Positions 228-4,319 of a stretch of 64,000 nucleotides of DNA are shown piece by piece. The translations under genes and the position numbers were made by a program. The stretch's first letter is position 1. Every line of letters starts with the position of its first letter. Source of the stretch: Macrostomum hystrix (taxonomy: Eukaryota > Animalia > Platyhelminthes); the NCBI GenBank assembly GCA_950097015.1, contig CATNEN010000008.1, positions 4,587,650 to 4,651,649 on the forward strand, given 5' to 3'. Under the pieces are notes generated by a model that had not been told where the DNA came from, searched no databases, and was given only the letters and a program-made list of their open reading frames with translations.

Positions 228-632
228 AAGAGAAAGAGAGGGGCAGGTAGTGGGTGAGAAGGAGAGGGGCAGGTAGTGGGTGAGAAGGAAAGGGGCAGGT
301 AGTGGGTGAGAAGGAGAGGGGCAGGTAGTGGGTGAGAAGCAGAGGGGCAGGTAGTGGGTGAGAAGGAGAGGGGCAGGTAGTGGGTGAGAAAGAGAGGGGC
401 AGATAGTGGGTGAGAAAGAGTGGGGGAGATAGTGGGTGAGAAAGAGTAGGGGAGATAGTGGGTGAGAAAGAGAGGGGCAGTTAGTGGGTGAGAAAGAGAG
501 GGGAAGATAGTGGGTGAGAAAGAGAGGGGCAGGTAGTGGGTGAGAAAGAGAGGGGCAGATAGTGGGTGAGAAAGAGAGGGGCAGATAGTGGGTGAGAAAT
601 AGAGGGGAAGATAGTGGGTGAGAAAGAGAGGG
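228..632. repeat. 26-bp purine-rich minisatellite (GGGCAGGTAGTGGGTGAGAAGGAGAG)n, ~15 copies
   Basis: Direct tandem periodicity of 26 bp; explains ORFs 134..754 and 162..659, whose 26-aa repeat equals 3 monomers. Confidence 0.95.
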
Positions 633-1044
633 GAGTTGAGAGTTGAGAGTTGCCGGCACAGATCTAATCTGATCTGATCAAATGAGGCTGTGTTGTCATC
701 ATCAGCGGCTGAGGCAGCACAATTTGATGGAATCCAAATCAAATTAGTTGGCATTTTGTGAACTTTTCAATGTCGTCAAGACGAAATCTAATTTTTTTAT
801 CAAAGAAAAATTTCTTCTGAACTTAATTTGGGTCCCTAAAAATCAAGGACATCATGAAATATATACTAAGGCTTGACTGAGTAAAAGCTACTGTAACTGA
901 AGCCACATTTTCAAGAATGCGTATTGAGACAAAATGGAGAATTTATTTACTTTTGCCAGCAAAAATATTCCAACAGAAAGGGAGATAGAGGAAAATGAAG
1001 GGGGTAGAAGACGATTGGAAGTACGATATGGGAAACGAAGGAGG

Positions 1045-1266: not shown

Positions 1267-1447
<181 letters not shown>

Positions 1448-1586
1448 GGGACAAAAGTGCACCGTTCACGCCGGGTCCCTGAACACCTGGAGCAAGCTCC
1501 AGGGGACAAATTGCTCTACCACCCAGACAAGCTTCCGCAACAACCACCGGACACTTCCATTACAATCACCTGCCGAGGGGGACGAA

Positions 1587-2445
1587 CTACACCTCGTGCT
1601 GCGCCTCCGCGGTGGCGAGGCGCCCCAAGCCAGCCGCAACGGCATCAAAGCCTGCTCCACGGAGTTGGCCGCGTGGCTCCACCGTCACAAACCAGCAGCG
1701 GGTCTCCTGCAGGAAACCAAGCTCAAGCCGGGGCAAACCTACCACCCACCGGAAGGGTACTGCGTCGCCGCACGTTGCGATGGACTACCCAAGCCGGACC
1801 TGCCCCAGCCACCTACTACACCGGACCAATCACTACCGTCAGACCAGCCAAGCAGCATTGCCCCAGAAGCCGTGCACAGGCGCCAGCAAACCCGCCCACG
1901 GTGCCGCCTTCCGTGGCCGGACGGCAGGGCAACTGAGTGGTGTGCAGGCTGCCGCTCAGGCCGCTCGGCCTGCAACCGCCGCAACAAGCCGTGGCCGACC
2001 ACGCGGCCCACACCGGTGTCACAGCAGCAGCCCGAACGCCAAACCGCCACCCGCCGCAACACACAACCAGGCGCAAGTGCGGGGAGGTGGGCACCCTCGT
2101 TCTGATCCGCTGCGACATCCCGTGCCAAGAGACACCAAAACCGGACGATAGCTCCCGCGGCCACCTCGACATTGCTACGACCATAATCTCGCCTAGAAAG
2201 GACCACGACATCATGCTCTCGTCGGTCTACGCACCACCAACCAGTGCCCAACGCCAGGACAACTGGCAACCGCCACTCCACCTAATCCCGCAACACCACC
2301 GTTCGGTAATCAGAGGGGACTTTAACGGGCACGGAACCTGGAACGCAGACGGATCCTGGAGGCCTGGGCAGGTCCCACCAGCTCACCATCGCCAACGACG
2401 GCAAGCACACCAGGACCAATCCGGCCACCGGGGGAGATCAGTGCA
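1587..2445 (+). pseudogene. LINE N-terminal region: ubiquitin-type LHLVLRLRGG motif followed by an APE endonuclease domain (frameshifted)
   Basis: LHLVLRLRGG at 1587-1616 is in frame with ELAAWLHRHKPAAGLLQETKL. The domain continues in the 1937 frame (GTLVLIRCDIP, SSVYAPP, IRGDFNGH) and in another frame as LTIANDGKHTRTNP. Confidence 0.85.
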
Positions 2446-2469
2446 TCACGCGGGCAGCCCCACTTTGCG

Positions 2470-4274
2470 CATTGAGTCTTTTCGCCGACGACTCGGCTCT
2501 GCTGGCCACCACCGCAGCCTCGACGACTCCGCTCGCCTCCTCCAGCCAGCCCTGGACGCCGCGGCAGACTGGTGCCACACCTGGAAGGTCGTGCTGAGCA
2601 CCAGCAAATGCGTCTATGGCACTTTCAGCCTGGATGCACGCGAGACCAGGGGGATAAAAGCGAGTAAACCTCAGTATTAACGACGCACCCCTCGCCTTCG
2701 AAGACGCCCCCACCTTCCTGGGCGTCAAGCTCGACGACCAGCTCACCTTCGGCCGACACGCAGCCGCCGTCAAGAGCCGAATGGCCAGCCGGCGCCGAGC
2801 CCTGGTCGCGCTTAGCCACCGCACAACCGGGGCAGACATGCGAAATTTACGCACCGCGTACGTCAGCACAATCCGCCCAGTCGCTGAGTACGGATGTGCA
2901 GTCTGGGCTGCAGGCGCTGCGCCGTCCACATGCCTCGCCATCGAGCGCCAGCAGCTGGCCTGCGCCCGGGCCATCACGGGCTGCATTCTCCCATCGGACT
3001 CTAGAACAGTCCTCAAACTGGCTGACCTTACGCCGTTCAGCCACCTGGTCACCGAAAGGGCCGCCTGCCTGCGCGAGCGGGTCCGACGCCTCCCAGCCGA
3101 CACGCCAGCCCGCGCCAGCCTTTGCCGCGCCACCCAGCCCCGACTCAAAAGCCGCTGCCATGAGGCCTACCTCCGCAACCAAGCTGAGCGCGGCGCGGAC
3201 ATCACCGCCTCTACGTCGGGGGCCCTCGTCGATTCGCGCGACCTCACGCGCCCATTCCGAGGCTGCTGGCGCCGCGCAGTCACCGAGCCCGACGTCTGCC
3301 AGGTCCTGCACGGCCTCCCTCGCATCGATACGCAGCTGGGGTGCGCACCCTGGGATGCCCGGATTGACCACGTTACCTTCGAACTGGACATCGCCAGAGC
3401 AGCCACCAGGTCCGACGGACCGGAGGCCCGGGCGAAGGCAGCGCGATGGGCCCTTGCAGGCCGCCCACCGAGCGACATCGAGGCCTGGACCGACGGATCG
3501 GTGCGGGACGGCACCGGCCCGGGCGGAGGCGCCGCCGTTGTTATCAGCCGGCTCCAGAGCCTCATACGCCGCACTGCCGCGGGGCAACTATGCAGCAGCT
3601 TTCAGGCCGAGCTCTGCGCCCTCCGTGAGGCCCTCACCACCATAGCCGACCTGCCGCCAGAGCTAGGGGCAACTGCACGAGTGCACTCGGACAGCCTCAG
3701 CGCTCTGCAGGCCCTCCAAGCTGGCCCCTGCTGCAGCGGACAGATCTCGGCCGCTCCTGCTGGCACCACCTCCTCCGCACCTCGAAAAAGGTCGAGCTGT
3801 GCTGGGTGCCAGCCCACTGCGGCCTCGAGCTCAACGAGGTCGTGGACGGGCTGGCAAACGAGGCGGTGCTCCTCGAGCAGTCCGACGTCGGTATGCCGCT
3901 GGACACGGCCAAAACCGCCATTCGACGTGAGCGGCAGAGGCTCGACGCGCGCAGCCTCCCAAGCGCCACCTTGGCCGACCTTCGGGGATGCCCGAAATCG
4001 TGCCGAAATCGTGGTCGCAAACCAACTGCGTGCCAATGCGACAACCCTCTGTCGCGAGACCCTGCACCGCTTCGGCCTCGCGGAAGACGAACTCTGCGCA
4101 GAGTGCGGAGCCGTGGACACGCCGCACCACGCCATACTCTACTGCCCTACGAAACCCCTCGCCCTGGTTGGCACGGACCACCAGGAGCTCCTGCGCCAGC
4201 CCGGCAAGGCCATTTCCCTTCTGCGGAGCATGGGGCGCTGGCCGCCCCCGCCCCTATCAGAACCGCTGTTCTGA
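2470..4274 (+). pseudogene. LINE RT C-terminal half, RNase H and CCHC zinc knuckle (several frameshifts)
   Basis: SLFADDSALLA, DWCHTWKVVLSTSKC, FLGVKLD, RNase H acidic motifs split between ORFs 2781..4274 and 3806..4294, and a C-x2-C-x7-H-x4-C knuckle. Confidence 0.9.
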
Positions 4275-4304
4275 CCTGGGCGAGGTCTGAATAAAGAAGA
4301 AGAA

Positions 4305-4319
4305 GCAGCAGCAGCAGCA
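4305..4319. repeat. (GCA)5 directly 3' of the LINE tail; likely remainder of the target microsatellite
   Basis: Direct sequence gaagaagaa-gcagcagcagcagca. Confidence 0.8.

What the first reader, a model, noticed from the sequence alone, without database searches (positions are those of the whole stretch)
1548..1700. LINE with a ubiquitin C-terminal cleavage motif (LHLVLRLRGG) fused directly in front of its APE endonuclease
Seen: nt 1587-1616 encode LHLVLRLRGG, an exact match to ubiquitin residues 67-76, in frame with the APE start (GG|EAPQASRNGIKACSTELAAWL...LLQETKL). RTL at 1548-1556 sits at exactly the spacing of ubiquitin R54-T55-L56 (39 nt before L67). Established: deubiquitinases cleave natural ubiquitin fusions after LRGG; cytopathic pestiviruses use captured ubiquitin as a processing signal; some APE-type LINEs (L1Tc/Ingi and others) place a 2A stop-go peptide just before the APE domain. 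Inference: this family may use host DUB cleavage in place of 2A to release APE-RT-RNase H. That would expose an N-terminal Glu, an N-degron via arginylation, which could also limit the protein's half-life. I cannot check whether this has been described before.
Basis: partly seen in the sequence, partly recalled or inferred. Interest (0 to 1): 0.88.

Follow-up and report, generated by a model that had tools for sequence, protein, structure and literature searches.

The report
Ubiquitin-tail cleavage signal in flatworm LINEs
A group of jumping genes (LINEs) in Macrostomum flatworms keeps the last seven residues of ubiquitin (V-L/M-R-L/I-R-G-G) just ahead of its endonuclease, at the place where its nearest relatives carry a 2A "skip" peptide. 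This suggests that host ubiquitin-trimming enzymes cut off a junk leader that is encoded by a self-cleaving ribozyme.

Summary
In detail: window 1587-1616 encodes LHLVLRLRGG in frame with the APE domain. This copy is dead. A 93-nt deletion creates the apparent "direct fusion"; intact copies have a 35-50 aa arginine-rich linker between GG and the APE.

The motif is not a one-off. At least eight diverged families in this genome, plus M. lignano proteins, keep V-[LM]-R-[LI]-R-G-G while the codons differ freely; Arg74 uses six different codons in six families.

There is no ubiquitin fold, only the tail. The tail-bearing families form one clade whose sister and outgroups carry an N-terminal 2A peptide.

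New here: the first ~70 nt of the element fold as an HDV/CPEB3-like self-cleaving ribozyme that starts at element nucleotide 1, supported by compensatory changes. The ORF runs through it and often has no AUG. The elements also prefer (CAG)n targets. L1Tc has the same layout, ribozyme plus 2A.

Best reading: a host deubiquitinase-type protease removes the ribozyme-encoded leader. Cleavage is untested, and tail-only peptides are poor DUB substrates in vitro.

I found no published description. First readers of this scan flagged the same motif on three other pieces of this genome; none had been followed up.

The parts
1269..1446 (+). (CAG/CAA)n microsatellite, the insertion target. Its last 13 nt (1434-1446, CAGCAGCAGCAGC) are the 5' copy of the target-site duplication.
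   Evidence: the same 13-mer follows the 3' tail at 4306-4318
1447..4305 (+). Degraded copy of a family-A single-ORF LINE (leader - APE - RT - RNase H - CCHC - (GAA)n tail). It holds 2.86 kb of a ~4.5 kb element.
   Evidence: blastn against the intact copy in L015; Pfam domains on intact copies; copies elsewhere in the genome
1447..1517 (+). HDV/CPEB3-like self-cleaving ribozyme candidate, with the predicted cut immediately 5' of 1447. Helices: P1 1447-1452/1475-1480; P2 1456-1461/1512-1517 (one U-U mismatch in this decayed copy); P3 1462-1464/1472-1474; L3 1465-1471; P1.1 1481-1482 with 1466-1467; P4 1487-1502.
   Evidence: Rfam CPEB3_ribozyme hit on element nt 1-34; threading; covariation; pattern and covariance-model searches hit the 5' ends of these LINEs
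1449..1586 (+). Leader part of the ORF. The frame is open from the element's first bases, overlaps the ribozyme, and has no ATG in this subfamily.
1548..1556 (+). RTL at the spacing of ubiquitin R54-L56. Present only in family A, so it is either chance or a relic.
1587..1616 (+). LHLVLRLRGG, the ubiquitin C-terminal tail motif. The clade-wide core V-[LM]-R-[LI]-R-G-G lies at 1596-1616. The proposed scissile bond is between 1616 and 1617.
1617..1637 (+). EAPQASR, the start of the post-GG linker. It is followed by the junction of a 93-nt in-frame deletion that removed the Arg-rich linker and the first APE strand.
1638..2434 (+). APE endonuclease remnant, with stops. It includes LLQETKL at 1704-1724, the Cys-rich insert motif WCAGCRSGRSAC at 1938-1973 and GDFNGHG at 2315-2335. 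It ends at a 1.47-kb deletion junction.
2442..4274 (+). C-terminal part of the RT (FADD at 2481-2504), RNase H (from ~3480, frameshifted), the CCHC knuckle (4095-4145) and the stop codon (4272-4274).
4284..4305 (+). End of the 3' UTR and the (GAA)n-type tail.
4306..4318 (+). 3' copy of the target-site duplication (CAGCAGCAGCAGC).

Best explanation
The window holds a dead copy of a single-ORF APE-RT-RNase H LINE from a clade found in Macrostomum flatworms.

These elements land preferentially in (CAG)n repeats. I infer that they depend on read-through transcription. The first ~55-70 nt of the RNA fold as an HDV/CPEB3-like ribozyme that would cut the co-transcript exactly at element nucleotide 1. 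The ORF is open from that first nucleotide, overlaps the ribozyme, and in several families has no AUG before the endonuclease. Translation would then start unconventionally, as has been proposed for R2 and L1Tc, and give a junk N-terminal leader of variable length.

After the leader comes an acidic patch, then L-x-x-V-[LM]-R-[LI]-R-G-G, which is the part of ubiquitin that lies in the active-site cleft of deubiquitinases. Next comes a short polar stretch and an Arg-rich, NLS-like linker, then the APE. I propose that a host deubiquitinase-type cysteine protease cuts after GG. That would release APE-RT-RNase H with a defined N-terminus (E, D, N, H or C in most families, all destabilising under the Arg/N-degron pathway). 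It would do by proteolysis what the 2A peptide does co-translationally in the sister lineage and in L1Tc.

Shown: the motif, its conservation and protein-level selection; its positional equivalence with 2A; the absence of a ubiquitin fold; the ribozyme fold with covariation; the AUG-less open leaders; and the CAG target preference.

Inferred: self-cleavage, the mode of translation initiation, cleavage at GG, the identity of the protease, and any N-degron effect.
For: (1) Conservation. Families A, B, D, E, F, G, H in this genome, together with P0001 and the M. lignano proteins P0024/P0175, all have V-[LM]-R-[LI]-R-G-G 35-50 aa before the APE, while the flanking leader is barely alignable.

(2) Protein-level selection. 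Codons differ freely among families: R74 is CGC, AGG, AGA, CGG, CGT or CGA; G75 is GGT, GGC or GGA; V70 is GTG or GTC. Within family A, 9 amino-acid changes fall in the first 40 leader residues, and only synonymous changes fall in the last 16.

(3) Equivalence with 2A. In an APE-region tree the tail-bearing families form a clade (support 100/99). It is sister (96/91) to P0003, which has MDRG..LLLRAGDIEVNPGP + PHD + the same Cys-insert APE. More 2A LINEs lie outside. Of the best 150 library representatives, 26 carry NPGP. Published work places 2A at this N-terminal position in single-ORF LINEs (PMC3708506, PMC3894237).

(4) Accessibility. AlphaFold2 gives pLDDT below 50 for residues 1-66 (leader, motif and linker), and the APE fold starts at ~68. 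P1' is never Pro.

(5) Ribozyme. Element nt 1-34 of family A match Rfam CPEB3_ribozyme over P1 and P3 (22 bits, E 4e-4 in the focused scan). P1, P3, P1.1 and a 6-bp P2 all form in A, E, F and G. On the alignment 100% of cells pair, 4 of 11 pairs show compensatory changes, and slid controls give 22-64% pairing with no compensatory changes. The core pattern hits 13 sites, all of them 5' ends of these LINEs, against 0 in the control.

(6) AUG-less leaders. The ORF frame has no stop from element nt 1 to GG in 7 of 7 leaders, while the other frames do. Family F and old family A have no ATG at all; in B and E the only ATG is inside the motif.

(7) Precedent. L1Tc combines a 5' HDV-like ribozyme with 2A, and such ribozymes are reported to act IRES-like (PMC4035085, PMC6765202).
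Against: No experiment or read data here shows cleavage, expression or the RNA 5' ends; the one available run was uninformative.

Cellular DUBs need the ubiquitin body as an exosite, and LRGG peptides are 'very poorly hydrolyzed' (PMC7477763). The leaders have no ubiquitin fold, so an ordinary DUB may cut inefficiently or not at all.

The ribozyme match is below Rfam's gathering score (22 against 35 bits). In families B and D, P1 pairs at only 4 of 6 positions with the annotated 5' end.

The P1' pattern (E/D/N/H/C) can be reached by single-base steps from GAC, so it is not independent evidence for an N-degron.
Confidence: 0.55

Rival explanations
1. The tail motif is not a cleavage site. Instead it is a docking mimic: it binds a host protein that recognises the ubiquitin C-terminus (a DUB, E1 or another tail reader). 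That could recruit or inhibit the host protein, or stabilise or regulate the LINE protein, which would keep its leader.
For: Conservation reaches P7 (V70) and P10 (L67), which suggests an extended recognition surface. Without the ubiquitin body, binding may be easier than catalysis (PMC7477763). The region is predicted to be flexible.
Against: It does not explain why the motif occupies exactly the slot of a 2A separation signal in relatives. It does not explain why a junk, ribozyme-encoded leader lies upstream. It does not explain why G-G is invariant and P1' is never Pro.
Confidence: 0.2
2. Cleavage happens at GG but is done by a protease other than a classical host DUB. It could be an unrecognised papain-like activity in the element's own ORF (as coronavirus PLpro cuts LXGG) or another host protease.
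For: Viral papain-like proteases cut LXGG sites without needing a ubiquitin fold (papers listed). About 300 aa between the APE and the RT, and the ~100 aa Cys-rich APE insert, have no assigned function.
Against: Pfam finds only APE, RT and RNase H. The Cys-rich insert and the linker are shared with 2A-bearing relatives that lack the motif, so they do not co-vary with it.
Confidence: 0.1
3. Translation actually starts at codon 71 of the motif (ATG in families B, E and P0001; CTG in others; always with G at -3 from the Val codon). The protein would then begin M-R-L-R-G-G, and the motif would be an N-terminal signal rather than a cleavage site.
For: In B and E the only in-frame ATG before the APE is this codon. 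The Val codon supplies a purine at -3.
Against: Family G uses CTC at this position, which is not a near-cognate start. L67 and the acidic patch upstream are conserved in character across families. The frame is open with no stops from element nt 1 in all families. All of this indicates that the upstream part is translated.
Confidence: 0.08
4. The conservation is at the RNA or DNA level (part of a promoter or RNA structure), or the match is a chance or one-off capture of a ubiquitin mRNA fragment.
For: The neighbouring ribozyme block is conserved at the nucleotide level.
Against: The motif codons vary synonymously in nearly every position while the peptide is fixed. It differs from the host ubiquitin tail at 5-6 synonymous sites. 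It is present in at least 8 deeply diverged families and in a second species.
Confidence: 0.03

Closest known systems
L1Tc / Ingi non-LTR retrotransposons of trypanosomes
   Same: Single ORF without ORF1; APE-RT-RNase H-zinc knuckle; an HDV-like ribozyme in the first ~77 nt that frees the RNA from co-transcripts; a short separation signal in the N-terminal leader just before the APE (PMC4035085, PMC6765202, PMC3708506).
   Different: L1Tc uses a 2A StopGo peptide (co-translational, with no protease). These flatworm elements have the ubiquitin tail VLRLRGG, which would need a protease. They also target (CAG)n. Membership of the Ingi clade was not tested.
2A-bearing single-ORF APE LINEs of metazoans (CR1, Crack, Rex1, L2 clades; Odon et al. 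2013)
   Same: An N-terminal signal upstream of the APE that correlates with the absence of ORF1. The sister lineage found here (P0003) has 2A + PHD + the same Cys-insert APE, and a ribozyme-like motif upstream.
   Different: The D(V/I)ExNPGP motif is absent from all the tail-bearing families. No PHD finger follows the signal; an Arg-rich linker does.
Natural ubiquitin fusions (polyubiquitin, UBA52, RPS27A) and ubiquitin insertions in cytopathic pestiviruses
   Same: LRLRGG followed by a non-Pro residue; the downstream protein is released by host DUBs (established knowledge).
   Different: Those carry the complete 76-residue beta-grasp fold. Here only the last ~7-10 residues are present.
LXGG sites of coronavirus/arterivirus papain-like proteases
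   Same: A short ubiquitin-tail-like peptide used as a polyprotein cleavage site without a ubiquitin fold (papers listed).
   Different: Those viruses encode their own DUB-like protease. No protease domain is detectable in these LINEs.
R2 elements
   Same: Co-transcription with host sequence; a 5' HDV-like ribozyme that cuts at the element junction; an ORF often without a clear AUG and proposed IRES-like initiation (PMC3774820, PMC6765202).
   Different: R2 has a restriction-like endonuclease, targets 28S rDNA, and has no known leader-removal signal.

Membership tests
Ubiquitin / ubiquitin-like domain (PF00240) | ~72-76 residue beta-grasp domain detectable by profile | tested here: not met
   No PF00240 hit on full ORFs or on 7 leaders at E<=10. 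In-register identity to host ubiquitin upstream of the last 10 residues is 1-7 of 31-66 positions. The leaders are only 41-83 codons long.
Ubiquitin / ubiquitin-like domain (PF00240) | C-terminal tail L-R-L-R-G-G followed by a non-Pro residue | tested here: met
2A (StopGo) leader of single-ORF LINEs | D(V/I)ExNPGP motif | tested here: not met
   Absent in families A-H and P0001/P0024. Present in the relatives P0003, P0006, P0007, P0009-12, P0016, P0017, P0022 and P0023.
2A (StopGo) leader of single-ORF LINEs | [quoted passage not shown] | tested here: met
   Motif 35-50 aa before the APE. A single ORF of ~1465-1545 aa, with no ORF1 between the 5' end and the motif.
HDV-like self-cleaving ribozyme (HDV/CPEB3 type) | Nested double pseudoknot: P1 starting at the cleavage site, P3 with a ~7-nt L3, P1.1, and P2 closing the fold | tested here: met
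   All pairs form in A, E, F and G. 100% pairing and 4 of 11 compensatory pairs, against slid controls. In B and D, P1 pairs at only 4 of 6 positions.
HDV-like self-cleaving ribozyme (HDV/CPEB3 type) | Score at or above Rfam's gathering threshold for a curated HDV-like family | tested here: not met
   CPEB3_ribozyme 22 bits against a gathering score of 35 (E 4e-4 on 107 nt). Family F scores 10.7 bits.
HDV-like self-cleaving ribozyme (HDV/CPEB3 type) | Catalytic C in J4/2 and actual self-cleavage | not testable with these tools
   A conserved CUAA precedes the P2 3' strand in A, E and F. Activity needs an in vitro cleavage assay.
APE-type non-LTR retrotransposon | APE + RT (+ RNase H) in one ORF, a 3' simple-repeat tail, and target-site duplications | tested here: met
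   Pfam Exo_endo_phos, RVT_1 and RNase_H. (GAA)n/(GAAA)n tails and 10-13 bp TSDs.
Microsatellite-preferring LINEs | Most insertions lie in or next to one kind of simple repeat | tested here: met
   At least 14 of 19 distinct 5' junctions from families A, B, D, E, F and G abut CAG/CAA-rich repeats.

The most novel reading that the evidence does not exclude
This LINE clade owns neither promoter, cap nor start codon. It inserts into CAG repeats in the glutamine phase, rides on host transcripts, frees its RNA with an HDV-like ribozyme, and frees its protein by presenting a bare ubiquitin tail to host deubiquitinases. In at least one M. lignano gene model the host transcript is the polyQ-coding exon of a zinc-finger gene, fused in frame. 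It would be the first transposon known to use the deubiquitination machinery for polyprotein processing. It would also show that ~10 residues of ubiquitin tail can be enough for cleavage in vivo, leaving an N-degron that limits the enzyme's lifetime.
Probability: 0.3. Interest if true: 0.9.

Novelty: new variant of a known kind. Interest (0 to 1): 0.8.

Why it matters
Single-ORF LINEs were known to solve the "leader problem" with 2A peptides. A whole clade that swapped 2A for a ubiquitin-tail mimic would be a second, convergent solution, and one that depends on a host enzyme.

It would make three questions directly testable:
- Can a deubiquitinase cut a tail-only substrate in cells? If so, this is a very small natural cleavable tag, an alternative to 2A.
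- How are cap-less, AUG-less, ribozyme-processed LINE RNAs translated?
- Do transposons tune the half-life of their own endonuclease/RT through the N-degron pathway?

It would also expose a host dependency (DUB activity) of an apparently young transposon family in a transgenic model flatworm genus.

Tried and rejected
- **RNA evidence.** The look-up of sequencing runs found one run, held only as contigs, with 5% of the words. Read laying placed a single 261-nt contig inside the RT region. This gives no information on expression, 5' ends or splicing.
- **Spliced-leader idea.** The genome holds exact copies of the 35-nt Macrostomum SL, which ends in ATG (sequence from PMC8629364). A CAG acceptor in the flank would put that ATG in frame. 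However, insertions with non-CAG TSDs begin exactly at GGGG with no SL, and the ribozyme explains the 5' end better. I kept this only as a minor possibility; it is untested.
- **Host-ORF hitch-hiking.** M. lignano gene models P0024 and P0175 fuse a polyQ zinc-finger protein in frame to the LINE. But in this genome only 1 of 19 upstream in-frame stretches contains a Met, and the orthologous gene is uninterrupted. This may be an annotation consequence of one insertion.
- **Captured ubiquitin.** Rejected.
- **RTL spacing.** Real, but confined to family A.
- **Complex prediction with a host DUB** was not run, because no admissible host DUB sequence was at hand.
- **LINE clade.** Assignment of the element to a named clade (Ingi, I, Nimb and so on) was not attempted, for lack of reference sequences.
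- **Literature.** Searches for LRLRGG, RLRGG or ubiquitin fusion together with retrotransposons found nothing. Subscription journals and Repbase reports were not covered.

Full report
**1. The observation.**
Window 1587-1616 (+) encodes LHLVLRLRGG, in frame with an APE endonuclease remnant. The ten residues equal the C-terminus of the host's own polyubiquitin and of PDB ubiquitin chains. RTL at 1548-1556 has the stated spacing.

The copy in the window is dead. It runs from 1447 to 4305 and is flanked by a 13-bp target-site duplication (CAGCAGCAGCAGC at 1434-1446 and 4306-4318). Compared with an intact relative (L015) it lacks 93 nt right after 1637 and 1.47 kb near 2434/2442, and it has stops and frameshifts. 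The 93-nt loss removes an Arg-rich linker and the first APE strand (LRVLQFNC). So 'fused directly in front of the APE' holds only for this broken copy.

**2. The genome and the element.**
The assembly is 220 Mb in 42 contigs. Three results point to a Macrostomum species other than M. lignano:
- It holds tandem genes with the exact 35-nt Macrostomum spliced leader (sequence from PMC8629364).
- The closest named proteins are from M. lignano.
- A host gene is 75% identical to its M. lignano counterpart.

Earlier scan notes also call it Macrostomum-like.

Intact copies encode one ORF of about 1,465-1,545 aa with Exo_endo_phos, RVT_1 and RNase_H domains and a C-terminal CCHC knuckle. There is no ORF1. 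The 3' ends carry (GAA)n/(GAAA)n tails, and TSDs are 10-13 bp.

**3. The motif is a clade-wide, protein-level feature.**
A profile of leader plus APE N-terminus found many copies in the genome. Translating them gives at least eight diverged families, shown as motif | following residue:

| Family | Motif and next residue |
|---|---|
| A | DELHLVLRLRGG \| E |
| B | EELNLVMRLRGG \| D |
| D | DNIHEVLRLRGG \| A |
| E | GDLYTVMRIRGG \| D |
| F | SELLQVLRLRGG \| N |
| G | DNLHQVLRLRGG \| H |
| H | PIHEVLRLRGG \| C |

Outside this genome, P0001 has NLLSVMRLRGG|N, and the M. lignano proteins P0024/P0175 have NLHRVLRLRGG|D.

In the alignment, V70, R72, R74, G75 and G76 are invariant, positions 71 and 73 are L/M and L/I, and L67 is nearly invariant. 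The rest of the leader hardly aligns.

The codons vary synonymously almost everywhere: six different Arg codons at position 74 in six families, three Gly codons, and two Val codons. Family A differs from the host ubiquitin tail at 5-6 synonymous sites. This is purifying selection on the peptide. It is not an RNA signal and not a recent capture.

**4. It is a tail, not a ubiquitin.**
No leader matches Pfam ubiquitin even at E<=10. In-register identity to ubiquitin upstream of the last ten residues is 1-7 of 31-66 positions. From the element's first base to GG the leaders are only 41-83 codons long. The RTL coincidence is confined to family A.

**5. Position equals that of 2A in relatives.**
The nearest non-Macrostomum relative is P0003. 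It begins M..LLLRAGDIEVNPGP, followed by a PHD-like finger and the same APE with the unusual Cys-rich insert. Many further relatives start with a 2A peptide.

A maximum-likelihood tree of the APE region puts families A, B, E, F, G and P0001 in one clade (support 100/99). That clade is sister (96/91) to P0003+P0004, with other 2A LINEs outside. Among the best 150 representatives of a 1.8-billion-protein library, 26 carry NPGP, and only the M. lignano protein carries RLRGG ahead of an APE.

Odon et al. and Luke et al. describe 2A at exactly this N-terminal place in single-ORF LINEs. Neither paper mentions ubiquitin.

**6. What the leader is: an HDV-like ribozyme.**
All families start with GGG-GGGGG directly after the target. 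A block near the 5' end is conserved at the nucleotide level.

Rfam's CPEB3 (HDV-like) ribozyme model aligns to element nt 1-34 of family A over helices P1 and P3. The score is 22 bits, with E 0.08 in a 20-kb scan and 4e-4 on the 107-nt stretch. This is below the gathering score of 35.

Threading shows complete P1 (6 bp, starting at nt 1 with a G-U pair), P3 (3 bp, 7-nt loop UYCACGM), P1.1 (2 bp) and a 6-bp P2 at equivalent places in A, E, F and G. The helix sequences differ between families.

On the gap-free alignment, 100% of cells pair and 4 of 11 pairs show compensatory changes. Slid controls give 22-64% pairing and no compensatory changes. The core pattern occurs 13 times in the genome, always at these 5' ends, and 0 times in the control. 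A covariance model finds the same sites, five weaker hits that could not be inspected, and four lower-scoring hits at E above 1 that lie at other family F and G copies.

Families B and D keep P3 and P1.1, but their annotated 5' ends pair with the P1 3' strand at only 4 of 6 positions. This is unresolved. The 2A-bearing sister locus has a similar motif about 150 nt upstream of its ATG.

**7. AUG-less leaders.**
The ORF frame is free of stops from the first bases of the element to GG in all seven leaders examined, while the other frames contain stops. Family F and the older family-A subfamily (including the window copy) have no ATG in the leader. B and E have one only inside the motif. Out-of-frame ATGs are scarce.

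The acidic patch just upstream of the motif is conserved in character across families. This argues that translation starts upstream of it. Family G uses CTC at codon 71, which argues against initiation at that codon.

**8. Targets.**
At least 14 of 19 distinct 5' junctions abut CAG/CAA-rich repeats, and in every such case CAG is in phase with the ORF. Because the junction is nearly always C|GGG, this phase may simply be inherited.

In M. lignano, two gene models fuse a polyQ zinc-finger protein in frame to the LINE, and a paralogue is uninterrupted. In this genome only one flank offers an in-frame Met.

**9. Mechanism proposed.**
The proposed sequence of events is:
- read-through transcription;
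- ribozyme cut at nucleotide 1;
- cap-independent, possibly non-AUG initiation, as proposed for R2 and L1Tc (PMC6765202);
- a heterogeneous leader;
- removal of the leader after GG by a host deubiquitinase-type protease.

AlphaFold2 places leader, motif and linker (residues 1-66) at pLDDT below 50, with the APE fold starting at ~68. The site should therefore be exposed.

The residue after GG is never Pro and is E/D/N/H/C in 8 of 9 families. That is compatible with an Arg/N-degron, but these residues are one-step neighbours of GAC, so the pattern is weak evidence.

The main difficulty is that DUBs use the ubiquitin body as an exosite and hydrolyse LRGG peptides very poorly (PMC7477763).

**10. 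Comparison and novelty.**
The layout is that of L1Tc (5' HDV-like ribozyme, N-terminal separation signal, APE-RT-RNase H; PMC4035085), with the ubiquitin tail in place of 2A. Host-DUB release of a downstream protein is known for natural ubiquitin fusions and for pestiviruses with inserted ubiquitin, but always with the full fold.

Full-text searches found no paper that links LRLRGG or ubiquitin fusions with non-LTR retrotransposons. That library omits most subscription journals.

First readers of this scan flagged the same motif on three other pieces of this genome. No follow-up was on record.

**11. Limits.**
- No expression or cleavage data could be obtained.
Copies were only compared.

Noticed in passing
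M. lignano proteins P0024, P0175 and P0174 (NCBI PAA56246.1, PAA91395.1, PAA93933.1): Two gene models are in-frame fusions of a polyQ-rich C2H2 zinc-finger protein with a ubiquitin-tail LINE inserted at the polyQ tract. A paralogue or allele is uninterrupted. The orthologue in this genome (C39:4087273-4088217) is also uninterrupted.
   Followed up: partly
Whole genome, e.g. C39:12667884-12685526; C1:10196334; C8:3485170: Besides tandem SL RNA genes with the exact 35-nt spliced leader, dozens of dispersed SL-like sequences with 2-3 mismatches exist. They include a ~927-bp tandem array and a multi-copy variant ending ...TTGCATA. These may be retroposed trans-spliced RNAs or SL-derived repeats.
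   Followed up: no
L020 (C38:16.09 Mb) and L033 (C1:27.08 Mb): Head-to-tail arrangements. A family-A 5' end sits directly after the (GAA)n tail of another LINE, and a family-F 5' end sits directly after a family-B tail. This is as expected if co-transcription plus ribozyme cleavage releases the downstream element.
   Followed up: partly
APE domain of all families, e.g. window 1938-1973; L015 ORF aa ~200-330: A ~100-130 aa insertion inside the APE fold carries a conserved C-x12-C-x2-C-x6-C motif (RPRCRLRWP...WCAGCRSGRSAC). It is shared with the 2A-bearing relatives P0003 and P0004. AlphaFold2 confidence is low there. In M. lignano P0175 the insert also holds a PHD-like finger.
   Followed up: partly
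window 230-640 and 1010-1200: Two G-rich minisatellites lie upstream of the element. One has a ~29-nt unit GAGAGGGGCAGGTAGTGGGTGAGAAG..., the other a ~25-nt unit GGGGAGATGACGGAGGGGAAATGACGTA. The window as a whole is rich in strand-skewed tandem repeats.
   Followed up: no
P0137 (Helobdella robusta XP_009024514.1): A leech LINE-like protein starts MALEQWLLRGGNDRS about 60 aa before its APE. It may be an independent or very diverged LRGG leader, or chance.
   Followed up: no
C8:2325482, C8:2326413, C1:16677620, C33:1826802, C3:11876215: Five further matches to the ribozyme covariance model (34-40 bits), outside the known copies. They may mark more LINE families that use the same 5' ribozyme.
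   Followed up: no
L055:1183-1260 (ENA metagenome contig carrying P0003): The 2A-bearing sister element has a GGGGGCC...GUCCACCA...GUCCCCUG motif upstream of its ATG, resembling the same HDV-like core. This suggests that the ribozyme predates the 2A/ubiquitin-tail split.
   Followed up: partly
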